Shown here piece by piece: positions 1,293-63,976 of a stretch of 64,000 nucleotides of DNA. The stretch is taken from positions 372,001 through 436,000 of IMG/VR virus record IMGVR_UViG_3300032236_002285. One strand, given 5' to 3'. The notes below the pieces were generated by a model. That model saw only the letters and a program-made list of their open reading frames with translations. It did no database searches and was not told where the DNA came from. Every line of letters begins with the position of its first letter. The stretch's first letter is position 1. The translations under genes and the position numbers were made by a program.

Positions 1293-1301
1293 TAATATAT
1301 A
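1293..1301 (+). promoter_or_regulatory. TAATATATA box, putative phage late promoter heading the tagged-protein array
   Basis: The same 9-mer recurs upstream of more than 10 genes in the window. Confidence 0.7.
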
Positions 1302-1323
1302 AGAAAGAAATAATATTTACAAT

Positions 1324-2088
1324 ATGAAATACTTAAAAAGATTTAACGAAGAACTTAAACCAAGTACATATATGTCTGCTGCTAAAAAGCTAACAGCAAT
1401 TGGTCATACAGGTAGAGCCAATGCTCTAAAAGATTGGGCGAATGAAACTGAAAAAAGAGAAGAGATGTCTAAGTGGAAGGATCGTTTACAAGACTATGGT
1501 CTTTTTGGTTCTTATAAGATGAATATTGTTAATCCAGAAACTGAAGAAAAATTTACAGGTGATTTTTACTTAGATATTAATTTTGATGAAATGGCATTTG
1601 AGGATAGCTTTGAATATGAGAAAGAAAATAATCCAGATAATATTAAAGGTGTTTCTATTTTATTTTTTATTGGTTTAATTCCAACATCTGAAGAAACACT
1701 TAGAAAATGTATGGAGATTATGCCTTGTGCAGAGTTTGGTAATGGTATGTTCTGGGGTATGAGTTGTGGTTTAGACTTACAAATTCTAAACGATAGATTA
1801 ACATTTACTAAATTCAGTTTAGATGATTATGATGATAACCTATCAGGTAATGTTTCTTTTGCTGATAGAGCTTCTGCTGGTAAATTCAAAACTTTATTAA
1901 AGAATATATTTAGTAATCCAGAATTAAACTATCCAAGTGGATATACAGATGTTGAATATATGTACCAAAAATTAGAACAAGTAGTTTGTATTAGACAATC
2001 ATTCTCATCTGATTATGGATTTGAATTAAAACAAGTGGCTGATTTTATTAATGCTCAGTCACCAAATACAATGTATAAAACTATTTAA
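1324..2088 (+). CDS. N-tagged hypothetical protein, paralog family A
   Basis: Starts MKYLKRFNEE. Shares SAAxKLxxxGH, G-x-FY, FxG, RxxAxxFK and a terminal YK with 2440 and 4675. Confidence 0.8.
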   Translation: MKYLKRFNEELKPSTYMSAAKKLTAIGHTGRANALKDWANETEKREEMSKWKDRLQDYGLFGSYKMNIVNPETEEKFTGDFYLDINFDEMAFEDSFEYEKENNPDNIKGVSILFFIGLIPTSEETLRKCMEIMPCAEFGNGMFWGMSCGLDLQILNDRLTFTKFSLDDYDDNLSGNVSFADRASAGKFKTLLKNIFSNPELNYPSGYTDVEYMYQKLEQVVCIRQSFSSDYGFELKQVADFINAQSPNTMYKTI

Positions 2089-2089
2089 T

Positions 2090-2440
2090 ATGAAACACTT
2101 AAAGAAATATGAAACCTTTAGTCCATATGATGATGAGCCACTAACAAGAGCGGAAGAAATCTTTGGAAAACAAACAAGATTAGAAAAACAATTTTCTGAA
2201 ATTATGATAGATGGTTTATCTAGCGACGATGTTGATGTTGCTCACTATTGGTCTACAATTAATGCTATTGTGGTAAATATAAAAGAAGATAAACTTCTTG
2301 ATGAAACATCAATTAAAGAATTACAACACAGAGTAGTAGAAGGTGAAAACCCAACAGAAGTTATAAATGATATTTGTTCAAGAATAAAAAAGCCTACTAG
2401 TGAAGTACAAAGACTATTAAAAAAACTAAATTCATTTTAA
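2090..2440 (+). CDS. N-tagged hypothetical protein
   Basis: Start moved to the internal Met (MKHLKKYETF) just after the upstream stop codon. Confidence 0.75.
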   Translation: MKHLKKYETFSPYDDEPLTRAEEIFGKQTRLEKQFSEIMIDGLSSDDVDVAHYWSTINAIVVNIKEDKLLDETSIKELQHRVVEGENPTEVINDICSRIKKPTSEVQRLLKKLNSF

Positions 2441-3261
2441 TGAAACATCTTAAAAGTATTAATGAATTAAAATCAAGCACTTTTAGAAATGCTGCTACTA
2501 AATTGAAGCAGTTAGGTCATATTAGAAGAAGTCAAGAAATTGAATCTCATGCTATTGATGTTGAGGAGAGAGAAGAAAAAGCAAGAATTGAACAAAGAAC
2601 TAAATGGTTAAAAGAACAAGCACCATTTAGATTACAATATTATAAAACAAAATATAACTCAGCCACTAAATCACATGAAAAGGATTTATTATGTGAAGGT
2701 AACTTTTATATAGAACCTTCTTTTGATGATGGTTGGTTCTCAGATTCAGGATATGATTATAGAGGTGAAGGTGGTAGATATAGTTTATTTATGTACTTTG
2801 AATTTGGTACTACTCCAGCTGATGTGGAAACTGCAAATACTTGGAAATCAATTGAATCTAAGTTATCAGAAGAAGCATATGATGGAATTTATTATGGTAC
2901 AAGATTAGGTATTGAAATTATACCAGAAGGTAATGCTTCAGTTGTTTCTAATGGTAAATGTTACTGGGAGTCAAGAGATAATGATATTTTTATCTTTGCT
3001 AATAGATCAGAAGCTATGAGATTTAAGAAACTTTTAATAGAAGCTCTTGAAGGTAAAATTGAATGGGGTAAAAACAAATGGAATGTGAAAGGTATTATAT
3101 CTTGTTTTGATAGATACTTTTTAAACGATGCTAATTATATACAAAGAAAAATAGATAAAGGTGAAACTCCTGAAGAACCTCTTTTTACAAAAGAAGATAT
3201 GCCTAAATTAATTAACACTCTTAAAACAGGGTTAAGTGTAAATCAATTATATAAAAACTAA
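2440..3261 (+). CDS. N-tagged hypothetical protein, paralog family A
   Basis: MKHLKSINELKSSTFRNAATKLKQLGH; TAATG start/stop coupling. Confidence 0.8.
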   Translation: MKHLKSINELKSSTFRNAATKLKQLGHIRRSQEIESHAIDVEEREEKARIEQRTKWLKEQAPFRLQYYKTKYNSATKSHEKDLLCEGNFYIEPSFDDGWFSDSGYDYRGEGGRYSLFMYFEFGTTPADVETANTWKSIESKLSEEAYDGIYYGTRLGIEIIPEGNASVVSNGKCYWESRDNDIFIFANRSEAMRFKKLLIEALEGKIEWGKNKWNVKGIISCFDRYFLNDANYIQRKIDKGETPEEPLFTKEDMPKLINTLKTGLSVNQLYKN

Positions 3262-4190: not shown

Positions 4191-4678
4191 GATACTTAGA
4201 AAAATTCAAATCATTTGAAAATGTTTCTGTTATAAATTCATATATTCAAGATATAAATGATATTTTACTAGAATTAAGTGATTATAACTGGGTTATTCTA
4301 GTTGACTATGTTCCAAAAAGATGGGAAAATCCAAGTGCAAACTATACAATAAAATCCGACTACATCGGTGTAGTTATCAAAAAGAAGCAAAATAAATCAC
4401 AATCAAGATATCCAGAAGGATCTGAGTTCAAATTCTCTGATGTTTCTGATTATATACATAGAATAGTAGATTATTTTATGACAAATGACTATAGAATTAG
4501 GATTTGTGAATTAAATAATGCTTGGTACAATGGTATGCCAGGTCACTCAGAGAAAGGTATATGGTCTGATTGGACCGATTCAGAGATGCCTGAATTAGAT
4601 AAAAACATTTTGGGCATAGAAATTAATATATACTTACAAGGTGCTAACCTTGACGATTTTAAATATAAATTTAGATGA
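4187..4678 (+). CDS. N-tagged hypothetical protein, paralog family B
   Basis: MRYLEKFKSFE; DINDILLELSD helix resembles segments in 5454, 5864 and 6309. Confidence 0.75.
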   Translation: MRYLEKFKSFENVSVINSYIQDINDILLELSDYNWVILVDYVPKRWENPSANYTIKSDYIGVVIKKKQNKSQSRYPEGSEFKFSDVSDYIHRIVDYFMTNDYRIRICELNNAWYNGMPGHSEKGIWSDWTDSEMPELDKNILGIEINIYLQGANLDDFKYKFR

Positions 4679-6677: not shown

Positions 6678-6701
6678 CCTGAAAATCTTTCAGGTTTTTT
6701 T
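6676..6701 (+). terminator. Rho-independent terminator
   Basis: Hairpin aacctgaaa-atc-tttcaggtt followed by a T-run. Confidence 0.75.
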
Positions 6702-6727
6702 ATTATCTTTGCTGAATATATAGGTAT

Positions 6728-8298: not shown

Positions 8299-8315
8299 AA
8301 AAAAATTATAAATTA

Positions 8316-12798: not shown

Positions 12799-12830
12799 TT
12801 TGTCTAATTGAAAAATCTTTCGTATCTTTG
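12799..12830 (+). promoter_or_regulatory. Bacteroidota sigma70-type promoter (putative early)
   Basis: TTTG-N20-TATCTTTG. Confidence 0.8.
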
Positions 12831-12889: not shown

Positions 12890-12920
12890 TTTGACAGAAT
12901 AAAAAAGTTCCTTATCTTTG
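12890..12920 (+). promoter_or_regulatory. Bacteroidota sigma70-type promoter (putative early)
   Basis: TTTG-N19-TATCTTTG. Confidence 0.8.
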
Positions 12921-12964
12921 TATAACAAATCAGATAAATAACCACTACTAAAAATAAAAATATT

Positions 12965-13810: not shown

Positions 13811-13840
13811 AAAAAAGAGACACTTAAAGTGTCTCTTTTT
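13811..13840. terminator. Bidirectional terminator
   Basis: aaaaagagacactt-a-aagtgtctcttttt. Confidence 0.8.
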
Positions 13841-14360: not shown

Positions 14361-14425
14361 AGTTTAGTGTATTTTATTTTTATTTTATCCTTTTAACTAT
14401 ATATTAAAAAATATTTTTCCTTTTT

Positions 14426-14457
14426 CTTGTTTTATAAACTTTCTCGCTTTATATTTG
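14426..14457 (+). promoter_or_regulatory. Bacteroidota sigma70-type promoter
   Basis: CTTG-N20-TATATTTG. Confidence 0.65.
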
Positions 14458-15106: not shown

Positions 15107-15137
15107 TTTGTTAGTTCAAAAAAAGTTACTACATTTG
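15107..15137 (+). promoter_or_regulatory. Bacteroidota sigma70-type promoter
   Basis: TTTG-N19-TACATTTG. Confidence 0.8.
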
Positions 15138-16359: not shown

Positions 16360-16387
16360 TAAACAAAATATCCATATATAGATATAA
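16360..16387 (+). promoter_or_regulatory. TAAAC-N18-TATAA motif (putative middle promoter)
   Basis: The same spacing occurs at six gene-upstream sites. Confidence 0.65.
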
Positions 16388-23305: not shown

Positions 23306-23425
23306 TTCGTTATATATTAAAATAGATTAAGAATTTTTCCGGTTTGTATTGAAATAACTTCTTTAGAAATATTTGTATTTTCATTAAAAGTGTACCAACG
23401 CTTAATCATATAATATATATTAAAT

Positions 23426-25008: not shown

Positions 25009-25038
25009 CTTGATATATATTAAATTTTAGGTAATCAT

Positions 25039-25069
25039 TTTGTTTTTGATAAAAAATTACTTATCTTTG
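25039..25069 (+). promoter_or_regulatory. Bacteroidota sigma70-type promoter
   Basis: TTTG-N19-TATCTTTG. Confidence 0.8.
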
Positions 25070-28140: not shown

Positions 28141-28193
28141 ATTTTAAACTTTATCACTATTTCCGTATAAAACATAAAAATATAGTATGATAG

Positions 28194-29744: not shown

Positions 29745-29787
29745 TTAAAATATTTTTTCTTATTATAGATTAAATTGATATAAATGT

Positions 29788-30339
29788 TTAAGAAAGAAGA
29801 TAATCAACAGCTATTTTATATCTGTTTAATAAATTAGTATCTTCTGAGTAAGCAGCATCTGTTGTATCAACAATAATACTAGATGTTGCACCTTGTTTTG
29901 TGACTTCTAAATAAGTTACTCTTGATCCGATTACTTTAGCAAATTGTTTATTTTGTAGATAGTAACTAGAATCTGGAGAGAATTGATCTACCTCAACTAT
30001 CTGACCAATTGTTTGATTTGTTGAATCTAAATGAATATCAAATCCCATTTGATAAAGACTTTTCTTATCCATTAAAGCTTTTATTTTCTTTGATACAGAT
30101 GGGTTTGTTTGGAATAAAATACTTTCCCATGTTTTGTTTTTAACATCAACTATACTTTGAAAATCGGTAATATCAATACTATATTTGTAATATAATGTCA
30201 ATTCAAAATAATTATAATCACCTTTTGTAATTAAGTCATCTATCAATGTATGATACTCATAGATGTATTCTCTGCCTTTAGTAGCAAGTTTATCTATTTG
30301 AGAATATATTTTATTAATTTTCTTTTTATCTGGACTCAT
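29788..30339 (-). CDS. Hypothetical protein (putative late)
   Basis: TAATATATA box 4 nt upstream (30344-30352). Confidence 0.7.
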   Translation of the reverse strand: MSPDKKKINKIYSQIDKLATKGREYIYEYHTLIDDLITKGDYNYFELTLYYKYSIDITDFQSIVDVKNKTWESILFQTNPSVSKKIKALMDKKSLYQMGFDIHLDSTNQTIGQIVEVDQFSPDSSYYLQNKQFAKVIGSRVTYLEVTKQGATSSIIVDTTDAAYSEDTNLLNRYKIAVDYLLS

Positions 30340-30351
30340 ATCTTATATATT

Positions 30352-30380
30352 AAAAAATCCGAACTTGTGATTCGGATTTT
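30352..30380 (-). terminator. Rho-independent terminator
   Basis: aaaatccgaa-cttgtga-ttcggatttt with an A-run on the plus strand. Confidence 0.75.
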
Positions 30381-31511: not shown

Positions 31512-31602
31512 AAATTAATAATTTATTTATTTAGTGTATATATTTATTTTCTTAAACCAAATACTTAAATTTTCATATAAACTTCAAATAACTAATTTTA
31601 TA

Positions 31603-33381: not shown

Positions 33382-33406
33382 TTAAAATATTTTGTATATT
33401 TGCATT

Positions 33407-40455: not shown

Positions 40456-40515
40456 AGATTATATATTAAACAAAGTGAACTCTTAGAACTATAATTAAAA
40501 AAACATAATAAATAG

Positions 40516-42767: not shown

Positions 42768-42813
42768 ATTTTAATATGTATTTTTATAATGTATATATAA
42801 AATTTTACTGCAT

Positions 42814-43494: not shown

Positions 43495-43559
43495 TTGATT
43501 TTATTACGTTTTGTCTATTATATATTAAATAAATTATTTAGTTTTCTTGATTTTTAAAA

Positions 43560-43811: not shown

Positions 43812-43824
43812 ATCTTATATATTA

Positions 43825-45899: not shown

Positions 45900-46007
45900 T
45901 TTTATTAATTTATTTTATTTATATATTAAATTGGAGCCACCACTTACTTATTTTTTAATAAAAGAGTTTCAATAATAAATATATACTCCTATAAAATATA
46001 ATTAAAG

Positions 46008-47711: not shown

Positions 47712-47804
47712 TATATTGTTAATAAATTTATTAATTATAATTTGTAAATATGAAAAAGTTTAAGTATTGAATTTTTAATATATACTAAAAACAAATAATA
47801 ATAT

Positions 47805-49608: not shown

Positions 49609-49689
49609 AAACTTATATATTAAATATTAAACTCACTATTTTGTTTTCAACAAAAGCAGTGACTAATTATATATAAACTACCTATTTGT

Positions 49690-50943: not shown

Positions 50944-50960
50944 AAAAAAAGAATTAATAC

Positions 50961-50980
50961 TTTTAATATATATATTAAAA
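50961..50980. promoter_or_regulatory. 20-bp palindrome containing back-to-back TAATATATA boxes
   Basis: ttttaatatatatattaaaa lies between two divergent N-tagged genes. Confidence 0.75.
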
Positions 50981-50998
50981 TACTACATCACAAATCGA

Positions 50999-52372
50999 AT
51001 GAAATGGTTGAGAGGTTATAAATTATTCAAAGAAGCTAAGCAAGAAAAATCTTATAAGAATTTAATTAATGAGATATGTACTTGTATGGTACTCTTAAAC
51101 AATGAATTCTTAGATAATTTATTAGATAGAGGATTGAAAGCAAGATATTCTGAAAACTCAGAAATATTTGTTACTGACTTAAAAAATTTGTTATTAGCTA
51201 AGAATAGATTGAATTTAGGTAAGTTTGAAGGTGATACTTGTATTGCTGATGATGAGCTAGCAAAGGTTAATATGGCTTTTGATGGTATTGAGTTTGATAT
51301 TGAGAAAGATTGGGATAAATTAGTTTCTGCTAGAACAACTGCTAGAAATATTATTGATAAGTTATTATTAGATTCTAAACTAAAACCAGAGATGATTAAA
51401 AATATCTACTGGATTGGTCCTAATAAAGATACCGATCATGAGGAAGATATAGTTATAGAAGATAAAAATGGTCAACAATATAGTTTTTACTTAAATAAAA
51501 ATCTTGCTACACAAAAAACTGCTTCATTTAGTTTATTTGCTGATGACTTGATTGGTGCTGATATTGATAAATTATATAAAGATGAGTATTTACCTAAATG
51601 GGATAAATTAACTCAAGAATGGATTAGATTAATCTATGAGAATGCTAATAAAAATATTCAACAATTAATTGAGAAGTTTATTGACCCTAAAAGAATTGAT
51701 ACAATTGGTTATTTTGAATACTATGACATAAGACATAAAGACCCAAAATTCAAACACTTAGGTGAATTTGTTAGAGAGTTTGAAAAGAATATTTTAAAGT
51801 TTTCAGATTTAATGTCTGAAATATGGAAGAATAAAGATAATTGCTTTATGGACTCAAATAGAGTTACTAAGGAATGGATGGAAGTTAAAATAGTTATTCT
51901 TAACTCTAAAATTCTTGAGAATCTATTAACAACAAGTCTTAAATCAAATCATGTTGATGATATTCAAAAAGTTGAAGATAGTTGGAAATTGGCTGGTGGA
52001 ACCGTTAAGATGAAACTATTTAAGACTTTAGTTGAAAAAATGGGTTGTCTAGAAAGACCTGTTTACTTCTTGGGTAAAAATGGTGACATCTTTAATCTAG
52101 TCCCATCAAGAGAATTCTTTAGAGAAAACTATGATGACTTAAATATTAAATTTGATTATCATGTTAACTTTAATGTTAGTGACGAAGAAGAGAATAATGA
52201 TTTCACAATTAAAATAAAACTAGAGTTAGATGACAACACATTGATAGATATGTTTGTTATAGTTAAATTCTCTGGTGGTGAAATGTCTGGTAAATTATCA
52301 GCTAAATATAAATTTGATATCGCTGATAACTTTAATTATTTAATTTCCAAAAAACAATCTAGTGTTGAATAA
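50999..52372 (+). CDS. N-tagged hypothetical protein
   Basis: Start moved to MKWLRGYKLFKE, downstream of the palindrome. Confidence 0.75.
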   Translation: MKWLRGYKLFKEAKQEKSYKNLINEICTCMVLLNNEFLDNLLDRGLKARYSENSEIFVTDLKNLLLAKNRLNLGKFEGDTCIADDELAKVNMAFDGIEFDIEKDWDKLVSARTTARNIIDKLLLDSKLKPEMIKNIYWIGPNKDTDHEEDIVIEDKNGQQYSFYLNKNLATQKTASFSLFADDLIGADIDKLYKDEYLPKWDKLTQEWIRLIYENANKNIQQLIEKFIDPKRIDTIGYFEYYDIRHKDPKFKHLGEFVREFEKNILKFSDLMSEIWKNKDNCFMDSNRVTKEWMEVKIVILNSKILENLLTTSLKSNHVDDIQKVEDSWKLAGGTVKMKLFKTLVEKMGCLERPVYFLGKNGDIFNLVPSREFFRENYDDLNIKFDYHVNFNVSDEEENNDFTIKIKLELDDNTLIDMFVIVKFSGGEMSGKLSAKYKFDIADNFNYLISKKQSSVE

Positions 52373-52423
52373 ATTTTAGGAATACATGATATAAAAATAT
52401 ATATCTAAAATTCTTAAAATTAA

Positions 52424-55400: not shown

Positions 55401-56719
55401 TGCCTATAAAATTAATAACAGATGTTAAAACAGCAAAAGCTAAAAATATTCAAGACTTCTTAAAACCTAAGTTAAAAGAATTTAACGGACCAGGTAGTAC
55501 CGGTGTTGCGCCAACAGGAGCAGGAAAGCTAGCACCTGGATTAAATATCTCAGATATAAAGTCAATTAAAGATGATCCTATTTATAATACTAATGTAAAT
55601 AATGGTAAAACCAATCCTAATGATTATCAGATTATTGATGTTAAATATTCAACTGGTTCTTATATAAATGGTGTGAATTATAATTATATTTATATTAATC
55701 AAGATGAAGATAAAATATTAACTGATGCTAATAATTTAGTAAATACTCCTAATGAAGCGGTCGATTTACCTAAGGCTCAAAAAACTTTACAGGATTTGAA
55801 TGATGCTCAAAAGAAAGACCCTACAAATGAGGCAATAAAAGATATGATTAATAAACTTAAAAATAAGTTAGCAAATCTTTCTGATAATACTCAACCAATT
55901 ATTAAAATGTTATTAGGCTTTGTTACAATACCTGTAAAAATAATTGGTGGTATAATAAGTTGGTTAATGGACTTTTTCAAAAGTCTAACAAATCCACTAA
56001 CACTACCTGCTAAAATAGCAGAATTATTATCTTTTAGTTGGCTCATGAAGTTTTTCACACCTATTGGTATGATGGAACTTATAGGATTTAAGTTTGAACC
56101 AGCTAAACTAGCAGAGTGGCTTGCCTTGGTTAAGGTACCAAGTGTAAAACCACCTAATATATCACCTAAAATACCAGATGGTTTTGATTTACCAAGTGCT
56201 CATTATTACAAGGATGCAACACCAAAAGGTAGATTTTTAATACCAGATGATTTTGATATAGCTGACTTAAATATGGTAATTGCTGCTCCGTTTATTCCTA
56301 AATTACCAACCTATACAGCTAGACAATTCAGAGAGAATCCAACAAGACCTATTAAGTTAATATTGCCTTTTCTTTGTTTCTTTGAAAAAATAATAAATGG
56401 TATAATTGATTTTATTTGGTCAACATTAGGTATAGAAGCTTTAATACCAGCACCTCATATAAAATTATGTAGTAATTCAGTAAATCCTAGTATAAGTGAT
56501 GCTGTTAAGATAGCTGATGACTTGAAGAAAACGGGAACTGAACCGGTTGCTACAGGTGGTACCTTTAGTAATGGTAGTAGCACTAATATACCAACAGATG
56601 CTGGGTTTTTATATGATATAACTCTTGATAATGGGACCGTAGTAAAAGGTTTAAACTATGAAGAAATGCAAAAGTATATTAAAGACCATGAGAATATTGG
56701 TTATGATTTTAAATTCTAA
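52424..56719 (+). CDS. Large (1431 aa) putative late, probably structural protein
   Basis: AAATATATA upstream; internal duplication YSTGKFIPGIDYQYTYI / YSTGSYINGVNYNYIYI; hydrophobic helical segments. Confidence 0.7.
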   Translation: MALPGLFPLYPDPIPMKYQVSLGLPPLPVSEITKSIGITSSSSFLVPNIEYLQKFIEGDLGIADKAVKETLYKNFNDPIAQNNDKVFKSYASLNQIDIPDINKYKVDGKIKFPKEDVTAPNLDGIGFKAFEKTIMTSIFETQKPYLEVAKLVIANVAKIEDITARVMPLLGVPLKTKSLKPTGNSGAGDRPKAIGYQNGDELKKALSQLQTLTNQGSKIKIDKNGNATQSITPTGTASVSGNGDNTNWQILSSVYSTGKFIPGIDYQYTYIDLPSQTKNTPETADLNLGDDDPYSGYKPERIILGIFRSDGTPLDPNEYLKTIGSNGNNITYNETNFKRADWVLKSPKWHLPPYLSDTRSAIYSWPAFGSPTYKWKGPLLLTQDSKTKPADGWEIMKYEKGDKNVITGDDAIEGDPIITGFDTNQINEYKSYFTDTVKYKMNQSDGLEQTEKDQYSNEIISKLNIQSHLQNVYLYGQSKSSVYKQINNKPAYPESLKISFKPFQIYSASASQDVNLAAYNKSVGLQPGFIWIDPESDYETKIIRVDPTTKIAFEEGKGQPQISSTIKSFVKNKASFSISNGQNFNIDIQKNGLVTESFTNVNQYVLENWNYNSDTNLPPENRFENTNFYNISIWSTTPTKDYVNKSGTIELNPDSYYRELVRENDKWLYKSYIYDSNGDKSYVVISDGDILLNDNMKTRVRIQNGYIIRWYYAYNRVFNATNLPAFGKGRNLVLNYTNDLDSNSNLIINTTDTDIPLYQLKVENSDFPYGKIIDPSKITNDNLIKDQLFSKGKYGHGDAENPQEIEVIQRYMLTDLDTESYYIIEGVLTEKNTQTDTVPSTGGAASGGGYYRLPHALGATKVFLSLLVDIFSKLIPQITKMIALFKNPGSFIIDIIQRKLGEGFSIFSKQSFDTFEKAKSISNKKVDSTNRVSDKVNRLKDTFKNSPLSNVVYVDKKGNYKFLLDGVAMLPFEMFGLSIPFGADLNFSNLPDVPIKLITDVKTAKAKNIQDFLKPKLKEFNGPGSTGVAPTGAGKLAPGLNISDIKSIKDDPIYNTNVNNGKTNPNDYQIIDVKYSTGSYINGVNYNYIYINQDEDKILTDANNLVNTPNEAVDLPKAQKTLQDLNDAQKKDPTNEAIKDMINKLKNKLANLSDNTQPIIKMLLGFVTIPVKIIGGIISWLMDFFKSLTNPLTLPAKIAELLSFSWLMKFFTPIGMMELIGFKFEPAKLAEWLALVKVPSVKPPNISPKIPDGFDLPSAHYYKDATPKGRFLIPDDFDIADLNMVIAAPFIPKLPTYTARQFRENPTRPIKLILPFLCFFEKIINGIIDFIWSTLGIEALIPAPHIKLCSNSVNPSISDAVKIADDLKKTGTEPVATGGTFSNGSSTNIPTDAGFLYDITLDNGTVVKGLNYEEMQKYIKDHENIGYDFKF

Positions 56720-56771
56720 TAAACATTTTAGTAAGCTTCATATATAACTAAAAACATAAATTAAATTAAAA

Positions 56772-56993
56772 ATGGGAAAAGCAGCAAAAGAACACCGTAA
56801 GAAAGTTCAAGCAAGAAACAATCGCATCAATCAACAAAAGCAAAAAGTGCAAAAGATGCAAAAAGATTTTATCATGAATTTGATTAAGCAAGAGCAAGAA
56901 AAAGGAATGTTTGAGAATAATCCAAGTATTACACCAATGCCGGGATTGAATGGACCAGCAATCGATACAACAATAGAAGGACCTTCTATCTAA
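56772..56993 (+). CDS. Small basic protein
   Basis: TAAAC-N18-TATAA at 56720-56747. Confidence 0.7.
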   Translation: MGKAAKEHRKKVQARNNRINQQKQKVQKMQKDFIMNLIKQEQEKGMFENNPSITPMPGLNGPAIDTTIEGPSI

Positions 56994-56999
56994 TACTAT

Positions 57000-57179: not shown

Positions 57180-57237
57180 TTAATATTTAAACTTTTAATG
57201 AGATTATATATAAAAAAATAAAATCAATTTTCTTATT

Positions 57238-58323
57238 TTGAAAAATAAATCTACATACACAACACCTACACTGAATCTTAATGTAAATAAAGATGATGCT
57301 GAATTAAATGACTTTTTATATTGTTGGGAACAATTTGGAACTCGTCCTAATAAAATAGTTATACATAATACATACTCAACAAAGCCATTTAACCAGCTTT
57401 TATCAGAGTTAATAATTGAAAAAAATTATTTTACAGAGATTTTACCAGCAGAAGATGAGTTTGTCATCAATGATAAAATGTTTGTTAAAATAACAGATGA
57501 AGTTTATTGCGCATATGTGGTTGTTGATAGAAAACATGAAAACTCTATTATCAGCGAACTAACATTCTTTTACAAATCAGAAGAAGATTTCAAAACTATT
57601 CAAGAAATTGTAGAAGATCTAAATACTTGCACACTTAATTTTCAAGAAGAAGAATCTAATAATCTAAATACAATTGCGCTAAGCACTACCAGTGGTTTAG
57701 AAATAGAGCCTATTGAAATGTCTGAGCTAGATATTGATAATTTTGATTTGTATTACACAAAGAGTACCGGTAAAGATATTAACAAACTAGTAAAAGAGAT
57801 TAAAAAATCTGATAAAGGTTTAAGTATATTATACGGTGAAAGAGGAACAGGTAAAACATCAGTTATTAACTTCTTAGCATCTAAACTTGATAGAATTGTA
57901 ATATTCATACCAAATAGTATGATTGAACACACTATAAACAATCCAGAGTTTAGAAAATTCTTAAAAAGATATACCAAACCGGTAATTGTAATTGATGATT
58001 GTGAGATGATGTTTCATGAATATTTTAATAAATCAAATATGTTTGTAAATAATCTTTTACAAATGGTAGATGGTTTCTTATCTGATTCAATGGAGGTAAA
58101 TGTAGTTGCTATATTTAATGTTAATAGTGATGATGAAATAGACCATTCTCTTTTAGAGTCAAATAACTTGATAAGAGTTATTGAATTTGATCATTTATCA
58201 TCTGAAGAAGCAACGGATTTATCTGAATTTATAGGATACAAAAAGCAATATAAAAACAAAACAAAGGTTTTAGATATAATAAGGAATAGAAAACCAAAGG
58301 ATGTGAAGGAGTTTGGTTTGTAA
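57238..58323 (+). CDS. AAA+ ATPase
   Basis: Walker A GERGTGKT; Walker B IVIDDCE; NLLQMVDG. Confidence 0.8.
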   Translation: MKNKSTYTTPTLNLNVNKDDAELNDFLYCWEQFGTRPNKIVIHNTYSTKPFNQLLSELIIEKNYFTEILPAEDEFVINDKMFVKITDEVYCAYVVVDRKHENSIISELTFFYKSEEDFKTIQEIVEDLNTCTLNFQEEESNNLNTIALSTTSGLEIEPIEMSELDIDNFDLYYTKSTGKDINKLVKEIKKSDKGLSILYGERGTGKTSVINFLASKLDRIVIFIPNSMIEHTINNPEFRKFLKRYTKPVIVIDDCEMMFHEYFNKSNMFVNNLLQMVDGFLSDSMEVNVVAIFNVNSDDEIDHSLLESNNLIRVIEFDHLSSEEATDLSEFIGYKKQYKNKTKVLDIIRNRKPKDVKEFGL

Positions 58324-58340
58324 AAAAAATATATATACAC

Positions 58341-59787: not shown

Positions 59788-59788
59788 T

Positions 59789-60595
59789 ATGTATATAGAT
59801 TCTGTAATGAATTACACGGGAAGTAAATTCAAGCTACTTGAACAATTACTTCCCGTTTTTGATTATACAAAACCTTACTTTGTAGATGTATTTGCCGGTG
59901 GTGGCTCAATCTACACAAATGTCGTTGATAAGTATCAAAAGGTATTAGTCAATGATGTTATATCTGATTTAGTCGGAATACATCAAAATCTTCTATTAGG
60001 AGACGAAATTATTCAAACAACTAAAGAACTATGCCCGGGTAAAAATAACCCAACCAAGTTCGCCGAATTGAGAAATTCATACAATTTAGAACCAACACCT
60101 GCTAAACTTTGGGCTTTGATGTTATCATCAACTAATAATATGATGAGGTTCAATCAAAAGTTCAAGTATAATCAAACTTATGGTGATAGAGGTTGGAATG
60201 CTAACACTGATAAGAAGGTAGAAACATTTACTAATCATATCAGACAATACAAAGAAAGGATTAAATTCATTTCTAAACCATTTGATCAGATAGAGATATC
60301 TTCAAATAAAATTATGTTTTATTGTGATCCGCCATACAAAAACTCAAATGCTGGTTATAACGCATATTGGAAAAATGAAGATGAGGATAAGTTATATGAA
60401 TATCTAAAAAAAATAGACAACCATGGTTCTTCATTTATGGTATCTGGAGTTTTAAAACATAATAATATTGAATCTGAGTTGTTAAAAAAACTGATATCAG
60501 ATGGATATAAGTATAAAGAGTTAAGATTTGATTATAATAAGGTCTCAAGAGTTGGTAAAAAAGAAACAACGGAGATTATAGTTATGAACTATTAG
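59789..60595 (+). CDS. Dam-like N6-adenine DNA methyltransferase (T4 Dam-like)
   Basis: NYTGSKFKLL, FVDVFAGGGS, RFNQKF.YN, DPPY, EIIVMNY. Confidence 0.9.
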   Translation: MYIDSVMNYTGSKFKLLEQLLPVFDYTKPYFVDVFAGGGSIYTNVVDKYQKVLVNDVISDLVGIHQNLLLGDEIIQTTKELCPGKNNPTKFAELRNSYNLEPTPAKLWALMLSSTNNMMRFNQKFKYNQTYGDRGWNANTDKKVETFTNHIRQYKERIKFISKPFDQIEISSNKIMFYCDPPYKNSNAGYNAYWKNEDEDKLYEYLKKIDNHGSSFMVSGVLKHNNIESELLKKLISDGYKYKELRFDYNKVSRVGKKETTEIIVMNY

Positions 60596-60683
60596 ATATA
60601 TTTAAATATATTGATCCTCCCTATTAAAAATCCAAAGAAAGCGCACTTTTTAATATATAAACCATAAAAAATAAAAATAAATT

Positions 60684-60899
60684 ATGGAATACTTAGACAA
60701 ATACGATAAATTGGTTAAGTTACTTACAGAAGATTTTGAGATTGAAGGTAAGAATTTTAATCTAAAAGATGACTTTGAAAAGTTCTTCGTAAAAGGCAAC
60801 AAAACTGCAGGCACTCGTATTAGAAAAGCAATGCAAGAGTTAAAGAAATTATCTCAAGAAGTTAGAAATGATGTTCAAGAGTATAAAACTAAAATCTAA
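60684..60899 (+). CDS. Histone H1-like (Hc1 family) nucleoid protein
   Basis: DFEKFFVKGNKTAGTRIRKAMQELKKLSQEVRNDVQ; TAATATATA at 60651-60659. Confidence 0.8.
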   Translation: MEYLDKYDKLVKLLTEDFEIEGKNFNLKDDFEKFFVKGNKTAGTRIRKAMQELKKLSQEVRNDVQEYKTKI

Positions 60900-60911
60900 T
60901 GAAAAGATATT

Positions 60912-60938
60912 AAAACCCATCTCAAAAAGATGGGTTTT
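60912..60938 (+). terminator. Rho-independent terminator
   Basis: aaaacccatct-caaaa-agatgggtttt. Confidence 0.8.
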
Positions 60939-60976
60939 GCTTTTTAATATATAATTATACAAATAAGATTTATAAT

Positions 60977-61561
60977 ATGAAAAAGTTCAGTAACATATCA
61001 AACGTAAAGGTTTCAGAAGAACCTAAAATAGAAGTTAAACAATTAAACGAAGAAGAAATGTTTAAGGTTAAGGTAATGAACCTTATGGAACAACTTCTTT
61101 CTGTAAGAACTTATGGCCCGGTTGATAGATATCTAAGAGCCGGTAACATTAAAGTTGTTGGTAAAGAAATGTTTTTAGAAGCTTTAATGGACTTACTAAA
61201 AGATAAATCTTCAAAAGATGAAAAGAAAATATTAGAATCACTTAAAGCTGAAGTTTCCAACTGGGAAGTGATTGATTCTAAAATTGATGAAGTAAATCAA
61301 AAAATTGCTGAGAATCAAGAAAAGGATAAAATGATTCCTCATAGAAACAAGCTCAAATCTCTTTATAATAACTACGGTCAAGACGAAGAAATGTTTATGA
61401 ACATGGTTCAAGAAGCTTGTAACAAAATTACAAATAGCGAAACAGCTTATTTAAGAGGTTTAACAGCCGAATATATGGCTAATGAAGGTAAATACCCAAA
61501 AGAAGTATTTGCTAAAGTATCTGAATTATTTAAAGAAAAATCTAAACAATTAGGCTCATAA
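60977..61561 (+). CDS. Putative late helical protein with a weak N-tag (MKKFS)
   Basis: TAATATATA at 60945-60953. Confidence 0.7.
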   Translation: MKKFSNISNVKVSEEPKIEVKQLNEEEMFKVKVMNLMEQLLSVRTYGPVDRYLRAGNIKVVGKEMFLEALMDLLKDKSSKDEKKILESLKAEVSNWEVIDSKIDEVNQKIAENQEKDKMIPHRNKLKSLYNNYGQDEEMFMNMVQEACNKITNSETAYLRGLTAEYMANEGKYPKEVFAKVSELFKEKSKQLGS

Positions 61562-61568
61562 TTAATTA

Positions 61569-62335: not shown

Positions 62336-62517
62336 ATATCAAATATGTTTTTAATTTTTTTCATTCTTCTGCTTTGCTTAGAAGGAAACTTCATTGTCAT
62401 AAAAGATGGATAAATAATTCTATCGTAGTTTTTAATACTATCTTGAATTTTACCCTTCTGTTCTTTTCTAAGTGATGCTAGTTCTTCTAACATCTTCTTC
62501 ATTTGTTCTTCGTTCAT
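62332..62517 (-). CDS. C-tagged small protein
   Basis: Ends RRMKKIKNIFDI. Confidence 0.7.
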   Translation of the reverse strand: MNEEQMKKMLEELASLRKEQKGKIQDSIKNYDRIIYPSFMTMKFPSKQSRRMKKIKNIFDI

Positions 62518-62657
62518 AGATTAAACAAGTTCTTTATTTTCTCTTTTCTTTTTGTTCGTCTTGATGGTAGAATAGTTACTGAATGTGTTAAAGAGGATAT
62601 ACCACCTTGTAATCCACTTGGTAAAGTAAAAACAAAATCAAAATTCTTTATATTCAT
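62514..62657 (-). CDS. C-tagged 47-aa protein (absent from the ORF track)
   Basis: MNIKNFDFVFTLPSGLQGGISSLTHSVTILPSRRTKRKEKIKNLFNL; ATGA overlaps on both sides. Confidence 0.7.
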   Translation of the reverse strand: MNIKNFDFVFTLPSGLQGGISSLTHSVTILPSRRTKRKEKIKNLFNL

Positions 62658-63496
62658 TTCTCTGCTACTTTTCTAAAGTCAGTTAAGATAGTGTTTCTTA
62701 GTTCTCTGAACTCTTCATCTAATTCCTCCCAAGTCCATCTTTTTCTTTTAATCTTATCCCAAATAAAGTTAGCACAAGAAAAATCTGTAATACGACCTGA
62801 CGTTGCTATTTGAGTAGCAAACATAGGAATTCTCAATGAGTGAAAAAGAGATTTAACTCCGGTGTGGTATTCGTCAGTTAGTTCTAATTTCTTTTTGCAC
62901 TTGACCCAGCTATTAGAACTTATATGAGAAGTTGCGTGTCTGAGTTTAGCTAAGTTGATTTTGAAATTATCAAACTTGATAGTTTCTTTTAACTTAGCCC
63001 AATCTGGTGCCCAAATACATTCTAGATTGTTTATACGATGCCATTCTAAATCAGCTTTGAACTTATCAGGAGTGTAAACGTGAATGTTGAATAAACCATT
63101 ACGAATCTCAGTTGATTCAACAGAGTTGTTAGCGATCATAATAATATCCCAATCAGAATCAGAGGTAGCTGTTCCGTATACCTGAGACCCGAAGATGTAC
63201 ACGTTAAAGACCCGACTTGGGTGTATCTTTGATGCTTTAATTATTGTTTCTAATGTTGGTATCATTATCTTATCTATTTTAATATTTCTTACTGCTGATG
63301 GATCTAAACTCTCTAAAATCCCCTCAATACAATCTTGACAAAGAATTGAAACTCCACCATCTAATGTGTGTATAGAAGCACACTTCACAACGTGAGAGTC
63401 ACAACCATCACATATCTTATTATCATCAACAAACATTAGAGATGCTTTAAGTACTTGTGGTCTTTCTGGAAACTTAGATAAGTGTATTTTTCTCAT
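62654..63496 (-). CDS. Pol-beta-type nucleotidyltransferase fused to an N-terminal Zn-finger/tag module
   Basis: YIFGSQVYGTATSDSDWDIIMI; KSLFHSLRI; N-terminal CDGC..CQDC then RNIKIDKI-M. Confidence 0.8.
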   Translation of the reverse strand: MRKIHLSKFPERPQVLKASLMFVDDNKICDGCDSHVVKCASIHTLDGGVSILCQDCIEGILESLDPSAVRNIKIDKIMIPTLETIIKASKIHPSRVFNVYIFGSQVYGTATSDSDWDIIMIANNSVESTEIRNGLFNIHVYTPDKFKADLEWHRINNLECIWAPDWAKLKETIKFDNFKINLAKLRHATSHISSNSWVKCKKKLELTDEYHTGVKSLFHSLRIPMFATQIATSGRITDFSCANFIWDKIKRKRWTWEELDEEFRELRNTILTDFRKVAEK

Positions 63497-63714
63497 ATTC
63501 CTAATTCTTTTAACTTGTCGTCTCTTAATTTACTAAGCAATTCATACTTACTACGAATGAATCTTGTTTCACCAATACAATTACCATTATCATCTTCTAA
63601 ATCAAGACCTCTAATGTCATCATCACCTGTAATAGTGAACTGATGTCCTTTCTTATATACTTTACCGTTAAATTCAAAGTCCTCTAAAAAAACTACTCTG
63701 TCTCCAATTCTCAT
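63493..63714 (-). CDS. C-tagged small beta-rich protein
   Basis: MRIGDRVVF; ends LRDDKLKELGI. Confidence 0.75.
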   Translation of the reverse strand: MRIGDRVVFLEDFEFNGKVYKKGHQFTITGDDDIRGLDLEDDNGNCIGETRFIRSKYELLSKLRDDKLKELGI

Positions 63715-63953
63715 TTTAATATTTTATTTATTTGTTGTTCTCTAAATTCTTCTAACGTCATAAAATGTTTAGCATCCATCTTCCTAAACTTACCATCATC
63801 ACACTTGATAACATATGATGGTGCTACAGGTTTTAATGTAACTGGATCATAAATAACAGGAGTCAATTCACACTCATAAAAGCTACCTGGCTTTACATAG
63901 TAAGCCATTTCATCAACTGGTGATATAGTATCTTTAAGATAGAGTGTAGCCAT
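63711..63953 (-). CDS. C-tagged small beta-rich protein
   Basis: YVIKCDDG..HFMTLEEFREQQINKILK; TATCTTTG at 63958-63965 (-). Confidence 0.75.
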   Translation of the reverse strand: MATLYLKDTISPVDEMAYYVKPGSFYECELTPVIYDPVTLKPVAPSYVIKCDDGKFRKMDAKHFMTLEEFREQQINKILK

Positions 63954-63976
63954 TTTACAAAGATAGTTATTTTTAT

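What the first reader, a model, noticed from the sequence alone, without database searches (positions are those of the whole stretch)
1293..63965. Three promoter classes partition the genes and track the two protein tags
Class 1 matches the established Bacteroidota sigma70 consensus (T)TTG-N19/20-TAnnTTTG at 12799, 12890, 14426, 15107, 25039 and 26661, with the -7 box alone at 6704, 33395 and 63958(-). Class 2 is TAAAC-N18-TATAA (separate finding). Class 3 is TAATATATA at 1293, 14398(-), 23311(-), 23411, 25014(-), 30344(-), 40460(-), 43519(-), 43816(-), 45920(-), 47776, 49614(-), 50964 (both strands), 60651 and 60945, upstream of baseplate, LamG and N-tagged genes. Class 3 is a single box like the T4 late promoter TATAAATA but differs in sequence. 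Inference: an early/middle/late programme using host RNA polymerase with one or two phage sigma factors.
Basis: partly seen in the sequence, partly recalled or inferred. Interest (0 to 1): 0.75.

Follow-up and report, generated by a model that had tools for sequence, protein, structure and literature searches.

The report
Three promoter classes, huge Bacteroidota phage
This 476-kb uncultured phage carries three distinct, strongly non-random promoter motifs that fit a host-sigma to phage ECF-type sigma to T4-gp55-like sigma cascade; this is a familiar kind of phage timing circuit, but with a new late-promoter sequence and unusually many predicted leaderless genes.

Summary
Every listed site exists. 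Across the 476-kb genome all three motifs concentrate in the 6% of DNA that is intergenic. They point at the downstream gene and avoid convergent gaps. The two bipartite motifs are enriched only at one spacer length.

- Class 1 (TTG-N19/20-TAnnTTTG) is the Bacteroidota primary-sigma promoter.
- Class 2 (TAAAC-N17/18-TATAA) has an ECF-like -35 element.
- Class 3 ((T)TAATATATA) is a single box.

No RNA polymerase gene was found. Outside the window lie exactly two sigma genes:
- An ECF-type sigma sits in an operon behind a class 1 promoter.
- A 121-aa T4 gp55 homologue sits behind a class 2 promoter (PHROG hit; family profile to PDB 7d7c gp55, E 2e-9; fold TM 0.76).

Gene functions fit the order. 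Class 1 drives tRNAs, helicases and ligases. Class 2 drives replication genes. Class 3 drives capsid, sheath, baseplate and LamG genes. N-tagged genes follow class 3 and C-tagged genes follow class 1 (odds ratios 9 and 6).

One addition: all three classes sit either 4-5 nt or about 17-26 nt before the ATG. This predicts that 27-44% of promoter-proximal genes are leaderless.

Timing and start sites remain untested. The metatranscriptome contigs gave no 5' ends.

The parts
12800..12830 (+). Class 1 promoter (TTG-N20-TATCTTTG), the upstream member of a tandem pair before gene 12965-13588 and tRNA-Leu/Arg
12891..12920 (+). Class 1 promoter (TTG-N19-TATCTTTG), 44 nt before ATG 12965; the 5'UTR carries CCACTAC
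14427..14457 (+). Class 1 promoter, 28 nt before gene 14486-14752; tRNA-Met lies downstream
15108..15137 (+). Class 1 promoter, 30 nt before ATPase gene 15168-16301
25040..25069 (+). Class 1 promoter, 16 nt before C-tagged gene 25086-25943; the -33 and -7 boxes are conserved in LR745206
26662..26692 (+). Class 1 promoter, 13 nt before gene 26706-28112; the -7 box is conserved in LR745206
6704..6711 (+). Class 1 -7 box alone (TATCTTTG), followed at 6714 by the class 3 variant GAATATATA, 5 nt before ATG 6728
33395..33402 (+). Class 1 -7 box alone (TATATTTG), 4 nt before ATG 33407 (predicted leaderless); heads the operon with PRPP synthetase and FolD
63958..63965 (-). Class 1 -7 box alone (TATCTTTG), 4 nt before ATG of gene 63711-63953 (predicted leaderless); heads a minus-strand unit that includes a C-tagged gene
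16360..16387 (+). Class 2 promoter TAAAC-N18-TATAA, 5 nt before ATG 16393 (predicted leaderless); the operon includes RNaseH-like and Dam-type methyltransferase genes
28145..28170 (+). Class 2 variant (N16), 23 nt before gene 28194-28946, behind a terminator hairpin
29763..29790 (-). Class 2 promoter, 18 nt before the OmpH-like gene 29262-29744
31553..31580 (+). Class 2 promoter, 22 nt before ATG 31603, the likely true start of the ORF called from GTG 31534
40467..40494 (+). Class 2 promoter, 21 nt before glycosyltransferase gene 40516-41694
47735..47762 (-). Class 2 promoter, 23 nt before gene 47166-47711
56720..56747 (+). Class 2 promoter, 24 nt before gene 56772-56993; its -10 region overlaps a TATATA core
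57188..57213 (+). Class 2 variant (N16) overlapping a TTATATATA box, 24-25 nt before AAA-ATPase gene 57238-58323; the class is ambiguous
1293..1301 (+). Class 3 box, 22 nt before N-tagged gene 1324-2088; heads a run of N-tagged paralogues
4624..4632 (+).
14398..14406 (-). Class 3 box, 37 nt before the HTH-protein gene 13824-14360
23311..23319 (-). Class 3 box, 5 nt before ATG of N-tagged gene 22232-23305 (predicted leaderless)
23411..23422 (.). Palindromic class 3 element TAATATATATTA. The + copy lies 6 nt before ATG 23426. It is fully conserved in LR745206.
25014..25022 (-). Class 3 box, 5 nt before ATG of kinase-like gene 23767-25008 (predicted leaderless); back to back with class 1 promoter 25040
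30344..30352 (-). Class 3 box abutting a terminator hairpin, 4 nt before ATG of gene 29788-30339 (predicted leaderless)
40460..40468 (-). Class 3 box, 4 nt before ATG of GIY-YIG endonuclease gene 39727-40455 (predicted leaderless)
43519..43527 (-). Class 3 box, 24 nt before gene 42844-43494
43816..43824 (-). Class 3 box, 4 nt before ATG of gene 43560-43811 (predicted leaderless)
45920..45928 (-). Class 3 box, 20 nt before gene 45567-45899; this unit continues into baseplate-wedge gene 43825-45555
47776..47784 (+). Class 3 box, 20 nt before the LamG (Laminin_G_3) virion protein gene 47805-48848
49614..49622 (-). Class 3 box, 5 nt before ATG of gene 49096-49608 (predicted leaderless); N-tagged gene 48851-49096 follows
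50964..50977 (.). Overlapping class 3 boxes on both strands. The + box is 26 nt before ATG 50999 (likely true start of the ORF called from 50912). The - box is 25 nt before gene 50311-50943.
60651..60659 (+). Class 3 box, 24 nt before gene 60684-60899
60945..60953 (+). Class 3 box behind a terminator hairpin, 23 nt before gene 60977-61561
52395..52403 (+). Class 3 variant AAATATATA, 20 nt before the 1431-aa gene 52424-56719
42792..42800 (-). Class 3 variant TTATATATA, 24 nt before N-tagged gene 42237-42767
45977..45985 (+). Class 3 variant AAATATATA, 22 nt before gene 46008-46727
31537..31545 (-). Class 3 variant AAATATATA, 25 nt before N-tagged gene 30384-31511
58327..58337 (+). Class 3 variant AAATATATATA, 3-5 nt before ATG 58341 (predicted leaderless); the unit runs into Dam-type methyltransferase gene 59789-60595

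Best explanation
The window comes from a 476-kb uncultured phage related to the 'Mahaphage' clade, whose members are predicted to infect Bacteroidota. The phage appears to transcribe all its genes with the host RNA polymerase core, re-targeted in three steps.

1. Class 1 promoters (TTTG at -33, TAnnTTTG at -12 to -5) are read by the host primary sigma. They drive tRNAs, helicases, ligases, nucleotide-metabolism genes, many small C-tagged proteins, and the operon that holds a phage ECF-type sigma.
2. That sigma, which has only regions 2 and 4, reads class 2 promoters (TAAAC at about -35, N17/18, TATAA at about -10). These drive replication and nucleotide genes and the gene for a truncated T4-gp55-like sigma.
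3. The gp55-like factor, which has region 2 only, reads class 3 promoters: a single (T)TAATATATA box at about -13 to -5 with no -35 element. These drive capsid, sheath, fibre, baseplate, LamG and N-tagged genes.

Each class is placed in one of two ways. Either the box is 4-5 nt before the ATG, so that transcription would start on the A of the start codon and give a leaderless mRNA. Or it is about 17-26 nt before the ATG, giving a short A-rich leader without a Shine-Dalgarno sequence.

Shown here: the motifs, their statistics, orientation and spacing; the two sigma genes and what lies upstream of them; the functional sorting of genes; and conservation in relatives. Inferred: which sigma reads which box, the start sites, and the temporal order.
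For: Motif reality:
- Spacer-specific intergenic enrichment, strand orientation and depletion from convergent gaps hold for all three classes.

Class 1 is the host type:
- The consensus atTTGg...TAT.TTTGTa equals the Bacteroidota sigma-A motif.
- Transcription-start mapping in Flavobacterium psychrophilum places that motif at -12 to -5 (PMC9723704). Eleven class 1 genes here have the ATG exactly 3-9 nt after TTTG, most often 4 nt.
- Only 1.3% of genes have a Shine-Dalgarno-like 4-mer.
- Relatives of more than 634 kb are predicted to infect Bacteroidetes (PMC7162821).

No phage RNA polymerase:
- Pfam Rpb2_6, Rpb1_2 and T7 RNA_pol found nothing, though the T7 RNA_pol search had no working positive control. 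No protein carries a DFDGD motif. The largest ORFs have no RNA polymerase hit.

Two sigma genes:
- The 262-aa protein has Sigma70_r2 (4.6e-16) and r4_2 (6.8e-11). Its best PDB relatives are ECF SigW and SigE.
- The 121-aa protein hits phrog_234 'late sigma transcription factor' (4e-6). A 40-sequence family profile hits T4 gp55 in 7d7c at E 2.1e-9. The AlphaFold model (pLDDT 87) has 7d7c_F as top Foldseek hit, TM 0.76.

Wiring:
- The ECF sigma sits in the tightly packed operon 205429-211516, which starts 3 nt after the class 1 box at 205395.
- The gp55-like gene follows a terminator plus TAAAC-N18-TATAAC.
- The same class 2 box precedes the gp55-like gene in relatives whose protein is 79% identical, within otherwise different intergenic DNA.
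- The ECF sigma operon in LR745206 also starts with a class 1 box.

Function by class:
- Class 3: gp23-like capsid gene, tail sheath, tail fibre, baseplate wedge, LamG.
- Class 1: helicases, HNH endonuclease, ligases, peptidases, PRPP synthetase/FolD, tRNAs.
- Class 2: DnaB-like helicase, ribonucleotide reductase small subunit, SbcC, Lon-like and ClpP-like proteases.

Protein tags:
- N-tag with class 3: 42 of 48 genes, odds ratio 8.8.
- C-tag with class 1: 32 of 50 genes, odds ratio 6.0.

Geometry:
- Spacing is bimodal in all three classes. 93 of 95 starts at short spacing are ATG. The base before the ATG is a pyrimidine in 81% of these against 55% of other genes.

Conservation:
- TAATATATA is intergenic in 9 of 10 cases in 41 kb of LR745206.
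- Footprints appear at orthologous sites.
- The same box with 4-5 nt spacing occurs in a lineage whose gp55-like protein is only 58% identical, including before a gp25-like baseplate gene.
Against: - There is no direct transcript evidence. Lake metatranscriptome contigs from relatives (85-95% identical) cover the capsid gene and stop at its terminator, but give no 5' ends. One contig runs through the promoter region.
- The class 2 -10 element (TATAA) is not the CGT-type -10 usual for ECF sigmas, and the ECF gene is not auto-regulated from its own class.
- Classes 2 and 3 share the TATA register, and a few sites satisfy both (for example 56720 and 57188).
- The gp55-like protein lacks the C-terminal third of T4 gp55. 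No gp45-type clamp and no gp33-like protein was recognised, so the T4 mechanism cannot be assumed in full.
- In LR745206 a class 3 box lies about 90 nt before the ECF sigma gene, so the order is not strictly linear in every relative.
- Some non-structural genes also sit behind class 3 (GIY-YIG endonuclease, kinase-like ATPase, Dam methylase).
- Genes were called by a simple longest-ORF rule.
- The tag statistics count tandem paralogues within one operon as separate observations.
- Very divergent RNA polymerases would escape the searches used.
Confidence: 0.7

Rival explanations
1. There are only two phage-specific systems. Classes 2 and 3 would be one promoter family with a TATA(A/T)A core read by a single phage factor. 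TAAAC would be an optional upstream enhancer or activator site. The second sigma would then serve something else.
For: The two classes share the same register relative to the ATG: TATATA+4 and TATAA+5 put TATA at the same place. Six genes score as both classes, and several class 2 sites contain TATATAA.
Against: TAAAC enrichment is strictly spacer-specific: 23 of 42 sites are intergenic at N17/18, against 0-1 at most other spacers and 4 at N16. The 143 TAATATATA sites show no C at the matching upstream position, 13 of 143, which is background. The gene functions differ: replication genes against virion genes. The genome holds two structurally different sigmas, one with a -35-reading region 4 and one without.
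Confidence: 0.12
2. Class 3 is read by an unrecognised phage RNA polymerase, or by a modified host holoenzyme, rather than by the gp55-like protein. AT-rich single-box promoters of phiKZ-like and AR9-like non-virion polymerases would be the model.
For: Five ORFs of 1351-1943 aa and one of 987 aa have no family or structure match at all. Divergent phage polymerases escape Pfam. The sigma-to-motif assignment is inference only.
Against: No beta or beta-prime domain was found, and no DFDGD catalytic motif exists anywhere in the proteome. A bona fide gp55 homologue is present and is very highly conserved: 79-97% identity across hundreds of relatives. The box resembles the T4 late box in type and position. 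Several of the large ORFs are themselves behind class 3 boxes, as virion proteins would be.
Confidence: 0.1
3. The boxes are not promoters. They would be translation-initiation or RNA-processing signals, or operator sites for a repressor, placed at fixed distance from start codons.
For: A box 4-5 nt before the ATG occupies the position of a ribosome-binding site. No transcript 5' ends are available.
Against: The same two spacing modes occur for class 1, which is the experimentally defined Bacteroidota sigma-A promoter with a known distance to the start site (PMC9723704). The second mode (17-26 nt) does not fit a ribosome-binding site. The boxes follow terminators, occur in both orientations in divergent gaps and are absent from convergent gaps. 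Class 1 sites also precede tRNA genes.
Confidence: 0.04

Closest known systems
Bacteriophage T4 late transcription (gp55 with gp33 and gp45; late promoter TATAAATA at about -13 to -6)
   Same: A single AT-rich -10-type box without a -35 element lies in front of virion genes. The genome has a gp55 homologue: phrog_234, a family-profile hit to 7d7c gp55 at E 2e-9, and fold TM 0.76. The capsid gene is gp23-like and the baseplate wedge is gp6-like.
   Different: The box is TAATATATA, not TATAAATA. The sigma is 121 aa against 185 aa and lacks the C-terminal third. From memory, that third carries the clamp-binding tail in T4. No gp45-type clamp or gp33 was recognised. The middle class uses a phage sigma rather than MotA/AsiA. 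About 44% of the boxes abut the ATG.
Bacillus phage SPO1 sigma cascade (host sigma A, then gp28, then gp33/34)
   Same: The logic is successive replacement of the sigma on the host core enzyme, with each sigma gene placed behind the preceding promoter class. This comparison is from my own knowledge of the system.
   Different: The host phylum and promoter sequences differ. The last factor here is of the T4 gp55 type, not a two-protein SPO1-type sigma. No experiment has been done.
Bacteroidota primary-sigma promoters (-33 TTTG / -7 TAnnTTTG)
   Same: The class 1 consensus, the spacer of 19-20 nt and the inferred distance to +1 match the motif mapped at -12 to -5 in F. psychrophilum (PMC9723704).
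   Different: None in the motif itself. In the phage, 34% of class 1 genes are predicted leaderless, against 5.5% of mRNAs in F. psychrophilum.
ECF (group 4) sigma promoters
   Same: The sigma has regions 2 and 4 only, and its closest solved relatives are SigW and SigE. The -35 element contains the AAC core and the spacer is 17-18 nt. The AAC hallmark is from my own knowledge.
   Different: The -10 element is TATAA rather than the CGT-type box (PMC9723704 uses a CGT box to recognise ECF promoters). No anti-sigma was identified. The sigma gene is not behind its own promoter class.

Membership tests
Bacteroidota sigma-A promoter (class 1) | -7 box TAnnTTTG with a -33 TTTG about 19-20 nt upstream | tested here: met
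   45 of 89 N19/20 matches are intergenic, against 0-1 at most other spacers and 4 at N16. The consensus is atTTGg...TAT.TTTGTa.
Bacteroidota sigma-A promoter (class 1) | The box lies at -12 to -5 relative to the mapped start site | tested here: inconclusive
   No start-site data exist. Indirectly consistent: 7 genes have the ATG exactly 4 nt after TTTG, which puts the A at +1 (PMC9723704).
Bacteroidota sigma-A promoter (class 1) | Transcribed by the host primary-sigma holoenzyme | not testable with these tools
   The host is unknown. This needs in vitro transcription.
T4-type late promoter / gp55 system (class 3) | A gp55-family sigma encoded by the phage | tested here: met
   phrog_234 at 4e-6; family-profile hit to 7d7c gp55 at 2.1e-9 over residues 8-131; Foldseek top hit 7d7c_F with TM 0.76.
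T4-type late promoter / gp55 system (class 3) | A single -10-type box with no -35 element | tested here: met
   The position profile of 143 sites shows information only from -3 to +9 of the box, plus a weak A-tract about 17-20 nt upstream.
T4-type late promoter / gp55 system (class 3) | Consensus TATAAATA | tested here: not met
   The consensus is (T)TAATATATA. TAATATAAA and TAATAAATA variants are not enriched in intergenic DNA.
T4-type late promoter / gp55 system (class 3) | Placed before virion and late genes | tested here: met
   gp23-like capsid, tail sheath, tail fibre, baseplate wedge unit and LamG protein. Some non-structural genes are also behind it.
T4-type late promoter / gp55 system (class 3) | Dependence on a gp33 co-activator and the gp45 sliding clamp | tested here: inconclusive
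   Pfam DNA_PPF found nothing. No gp33-like neighbour was found. The gp55-like protein lacks the C-terminal third. Absence by these searches is weak evidence.
ECF sigma regulon (class 2) | A sigma with regions 2 and 4 only | tested here: met
   Sigma70_r2 and Sigma70_r4_2; closest PDB relatives are SigW, SigH and SigE.
ECF sigma regulon (class 2) | Bipartite promoter with an AAC-containing -35 element and a fixed spacer | tested here: met
   TAAAC-N17/18-TATAA: 23 of 42 intergenic, and 21:0 on the gene strand.
ECF sigma regulon (class 2) | CGT-type -10 element | tested here: not met
   The -10 element is (A/G)TATAA(A/C/T).
ECF sigma regulon (class 2) | This sigma actually reads this motif | not testable with these tools
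   The assignment rests on domain logic and wiring only.
Leaderless mRNAs | The transcript starts at, or within a few nt of, the A of the start codon | tested here: inconclusive
   There is a sharp spacing peak at 4-5 nt in all classes. 93 of 95 of these starts are ATG. The base at -1 is a pyrimidine in 81%. The conserved N-tag peptide begins at that ATG. No 5'-end data exist.

The most novel reading that the evidence does not exclude
A whole clade of huge Bacteroidota phages, with contigs up to 770 kb carrying a nearly invariant 121-aa mini-gp55, runs late transcription from a TAATATATA box using a clamp-independent, truncated gp55. The clade has fused this box, and its early and middle boxes too, directly to the start codon. 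A third to nearly half of promoter-proximal genes would then be translated as leaderless mRNAs. That is far above the roughly 5% reported for a host-phylum member, which hints that the phage favours or reprogrammes leaderless translation during infection.
Probability: 0.35. Interest if true: 0.65.

Novelty: new variant of a known kind. Interest (0 to 1): 0.5.

Why it matters
Nothing is known about how the largest phages regulate their genes, because they are uncultured and known only as sequence. Three points follow.

- The result gives an explicit, testable regulatory map: about 50 early, 30 middle and 180 late promoters, plus two sigma genes and their wiring. This allows genome-wide prediction of early, middle and late genes in this clade from sequence alone.
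- Such a map helps sort hundreds of unknown ORFs into host-takeover candidates (C-tagged, class 1) and virion or packaged candidates (N-tagged, class 3).
- It supplies compact promoter parts and sigma/promoter pairs for Bacteroidota.

The predicted excess of leaderless genes is a separate question about translation during infection of hosts that lack Shine-Dalgarno sequences.

Tried and rejected
1. Transcript evidence. Two run searches were made. No RNA run holds the window itself. Lake metatranscriptomes hold 8-11% of the capsid-gene words. Laying four runs on the capsid locus showed contigs of relatives over the capsid gene and the gene upstream, with depth ending at the terminator. It gave no read starts, so there was no start-site test. 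A depth dip at L024:439-584 is only a divergent acidic repeat inside a gene.
2. A possible fourth motif, AGAGATAA/TAAGAGA, was enriched upstream of genes. It is the coding sequence of the C-terminal ...ERDK... tag of the preceding gene; 66 of 68 copies are coding.
3. Phage RNA polymerase. Pfam beta, beta-prime and T7 families, a DFDGD scan, PHROGs on six large ORFs and PDB sequence searches on three all found nothing. The control genomes for the T7 family also gave no hit, so that particular negative is weak.
4. A single-sequence PDB search with the gp55-like protein found nothing. A family profile was needed.
5. A search for gp45 (DNA_PPF) and for gp33-like neighbours of the sigma genes found nothing.
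6. A weak Sigma70_r4_2 hit in window gene 13824-14360 is only a generic N-terminal helix-turn-helix, not a third sigma.
7. Literature searches for TAATATATA as a promoter, or for gp55 late promoters in Bacteroidetes phages, returned nothing relevant.
8. Complex prediction was not used. gp55-type factors do not bind DNA without core enzyme, and the host core is unknown.

Full report
**Context.** The window is bases 372,001-436,000 of a single 476,236-bp virus contig with 30% G+C. A simple longest-ORF call gives 629 ORFs of at least 50 aa and 94% coding density. Its proteins match uncultured phages of 635-735 kb (LR745206, LR756501-4) and, more distantly, Cellulophaga phages. The genomes over 634 kb were placed in the 'Mahaphage' clade and predicted to replicate in Bacteroidetes (PMC7162821). 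Only 1.3% of genes have a Shine-Dalgarno-like 4-mer at -20 to -5. Upstream regions are A-rich, as in Bacteroidota.

**Are the motifs there, and beyond chance?** Yes.
- TAATATATA occurs at every coordinate listed, plus one unlisted copy at 4624. That is 18 matches against 4.4 expected.
- The six full class 1 sites and the three lone -7 boxes are present. The window has 14 full matches against 4.5 expected, and the six listed are exactly the intergenic ones.
- TAAAC-N18-TATAA occurs six times against 1.0 expected. Two N16 variants also occur.

The whole genome gives stronger tests.
- Only 6.2% of it is intergenic, yet 116 of 143 TAATATATA copies are intergenic.
- For the two bipartite motifs the enrichment is spacer-specific. 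TTG-Nx-TAnnTTTG is intergenic in 45 of 89 cases at N19/20, but in 0-1 cases at N15, N17, N18 and N21-23, and 4 at N16. TAAAC-Nx-TATAA is intergenic in 23 of 42 cases at N17/18, but in 0-1 at most other spacers and 4 at N16.
- Against dinucleotide shuffles of the intergenic DNA itself, the counts are 106 vs 8.6, 41 vs 1.2 and 16 vs 1.5.
- In gaps between co-directional genes the motifs lie on the gene strand 43:1, 20:1 and 21:0. They are nearly absent from convergent gaps.

AT-richness alone cannot produce these orientation and spacer effects.

**Anatomy.**
- Class 1 has the consensus atTTGg-N-TAT(A/C)TTTGTa. This is the Bacteroidota primary-sigma promoter. In F. psychrophilum its -7 box was mapped at -12 to -5 (PMC9723704).
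- Class 2 is (T)TAAAC(a/t)ttt-N-(A/G)TATAA, followed by an A-rich leader.
- Class 3 carries information only in (T)TAATATATA(A/C), plus a weak A-tract about 17-20 nt upstream. TTATATATA, TAGTATATA and GAATATATA are tolerated variants. Changes in the last six bases abolish the intergenic bias.

The distance from box to start codon is bimodal in all three classes.
- Class 3: 58 genes at 4-5 nt, and a second group at about 17-26 nt.
- Class 1: a peak at 4 nt after TTTG.
- Class 2: a peak at 5 nt after TATAA.
- Almost nothing lies between 10 and 15 nt.

With the known geometry of class 1, a 4-nt gap puts +1 on the A of the ATG. The short-spacing genes are therefore predicted to give leaderless mRNAs. 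Four observations fit this:
- 93 of 95 such starts are ATG.
- The base before the ATG is a pyrimidine in 81% of them, against 55% of other genes.
- For N-tagged genes the conserved peptide begins at exactly that ATG.
- The same register places TATATA at -10 to -5 and TATAAn at -10 to -5.

The predicted leaderless share is 34%, 27% and 44% for classes 1, 2 and 3. In F. psychrophilum it is 5.5% of mRNAs (PMC9723704).

**Which enzyme?** No beta, beta-prime or T7-type RNA polymerase was found, and no DFDGD motif. The largest unassigned ORFs have no polymerase match. The genome has two sigma genes, both outside the window.
- G000 209428-210216 encodes a 262-aa protein with Sigma70_r2 and r4_2. Its closest solved relatives are ECF sigmas SigW, SigH and SigE.
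- G000 50240-50605 encodes a 121-aa protein that matches PHROG 'late sigma transcription factor'. A profile of 40 diverse family members hits T4 gp55 (PDB 7d7c) at E 2.1e-9 over gp55 residues 8-131. An AlphaFold model (pLDDT 87) has gp55 of 7d7c as its best structural match at TM 0.76, followed by sigma region 2 domains.
- This small protein is 79-97% identical across hundreds of relatives, on contigs up to 770 kb.

**Wiring.**
- The ECF-type sigma gene lies in a tightly packed operon (205429-211516) headed by an NAD-dependent ligase. The operon starts 3 nt after a class 1 box.
- The gp55-like gene is preceded by a terminator hairpin and then TAAAC-N18-TATAAC.
- In relatives whose protein is 79% identical, the intergenic sequence differs but TAAAC-N18-TATAAC is again in front of the gene.
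- In LR745206 the sigma operon also opens with a class 1 box. An extra class 3 box lies about 90 nt before the sigma gene there.

**Do the classes sort genes and tags?**
- Class 3 precedes the gp23-like capsid gene, tail sheath, a tail fibre, the unit holding the baseplate-wedge gene (window 43825-45555) and the LamG protein (47805-48848).
- Class 1 precedes helicases, HNH endonuclease, ligases, peptidases, the PRPP synthetase/FolD operon and tRNAs.
- Class 2 precedes a DnaB-like helicase, ribonucleotide reductase small subunit, SbcC, Lon-like and ClpP-like proteases and glycosyltransferases.
- The two tags are an N-terminal M(K/R)(H/Y)(L/I)K.(Y/F)..FE, on 48 proteins, and a C-terminal ...R(D/E)KKL..LGI, on about 50 small proteins.
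- Walking upstream to the nearest promoter, N-tagged genes are class 3 in 42 of 48 cases (odds ratio 8.8, p 4e-9). C-tagged genes are class 1 in 32 of 50 cases (odds ratio 6.0, p 5e-9) and class 3 in only 7.
- These p-values overstate independence, because paralogues sit in tandem. Among genes with their own promoter, 27 of 29 N-tagged genes are class 3.
- Exceptions exist. A GIY-YIG endonuclease, a kinase-like ATPase and a Dam methylase unit also lie behind class 3.

**Conservation.**
- In 41 kb of LR745206 (about 70% nucleotide identity in genes), 9 of 10 TAATATATA copies are intergenic with the same spacings.
- At orthologous gaps the boxes stand out as conserved islands.
- A lineage whose gp55-like protein is only 58% identical keeps TAATATATA/TTATATATA 4-5 nt before ATGs, including before a gp25-like baseplate gene.

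**Transcripts.** No RNA run holds the window. Lake metatranscriptomes contain relatives of the capsid gene. Their contigs cover the capsid and upstream genes and end at the capsid terminator, but they carry no 5'-end information.

**Conclusion.**
- The system is a sigma cascade of a known kind: T4-type late control combined with SPO1-type sigma replacement. It occurs in a phage group where nothing was known.
- It has its own late box, a shortened gp55, an ECF-type middle sigma with an atypical -10 element, and a striking predicted use of leaderless mRNAs.
- The sigma-to-box assignments, the start sites and the timing remain to be shown.

Noticed in passing
window 1324, 2440, 3261, 4675, 5454, 5864, 6309, 8316, 22232(-), 30384(-), 42237(-), 48851(-); 48 genes genome-wide: A conserved N-terminal peptide M(K/R)(H/Y)(L/I)K.(Y/F)..FE sits on otherwise unrelated proteins, nearly all in class 3 units. 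It recalls the T4 capsid targeting sequence, which is shared by diverse internal proteins (concept: PMC3012670; the T4 sequence MKTYQEFIAE is from memory). These may be proteins packaged into the head and cut after the ..FE.
   Followed up: partly
window 19043, 25086, 25943, 36254, 36812, 38744, 63493(-); dense at G000 436-476 kb on the minus strand: About 50 small proteins end in ...R(D/E)KKL..LGI (or ...ILK) at the very C-terminus. They lie mostly inside class 1 (early) units. Function is unknown; a shared docking or degradation tail is possible.
   Followed up: partly
window 12941-12947; G000 34893, 84736(-), 118415, 317135, 468931(-), 475563(-); L031 about 10510: A short element (A/C)TCACTACA recurs in the 5'UTR just downstream of class 1 promoters, 2-25 nt before the ATG. 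It is also present in relative LR745206. It could be an early-mRNA operator or processing site.
   Followed up: no
whole genome G000: Class 1 promoters are all on the + strand from 35 to 399 kb and all on the - strand from 440 to 476 kb. Class 3 promoters occur on both strands throughout. The switch near 436-440 kb may mark a genome landmark.
   Followed up: no
window 31534-32073 and 50912-52372: Mechanical ORF starts (GTG 31534, TTG 50912) are probably wrong. In-frame ATGs at 31603 and 50999 lie 22 and 26 nt behind a class 2 box and a class 3 box respectively.
   Followed up: yes
G000 218371, 221213, 255496, 271015 (outside the window): A repeated cassette places a class 1 promoter about 50 nt upstream of ACAAAAG(A/G)GACAA(A/T)AACTTTTTAATATATA (class 3). 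This gives tandem early plus late promoters in front of small ORFs. The same cassette precedes the ECF sigma gene in LR745206 (L043:7920-7947).
   Followed up: partly
window 18208-19041 and 59789-60595: There are two D12-class N6-adenine DNA methyltransferase genes, one in a class 2 unit and one in a class 3 unit.
   Followed up: no
window 39727-40455 (-): A GIY-YIG endonuclease with helix-turn-helix repeats (homing-endonuclease-like) lies directly behind a class 3 box with 4-nt spacing. A relative (L049:8534-9235) has a GIY-YIG gene splitting thymidylate synthase, also behind TAATATATA.
   Followed up: no
window 30344-30380 (-), 60920-60953 (+); L024:2958-3010: Very compact terminator, promoter and ATG modules occur. 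The U-tract of an intrinsic terminator hairpin runs straight into TTAATATATA, which is 4-24 nt from the next start codon.
   Followed up: no
G000 1-200 (contig start): The contig begins inside a Gly/Ser-rich tandem repeat coding region, so the assembly probably broke in a repeat. IMG/VR labels the record 'provirus', but nothing in the window looks bacterial.
   Followed up: no
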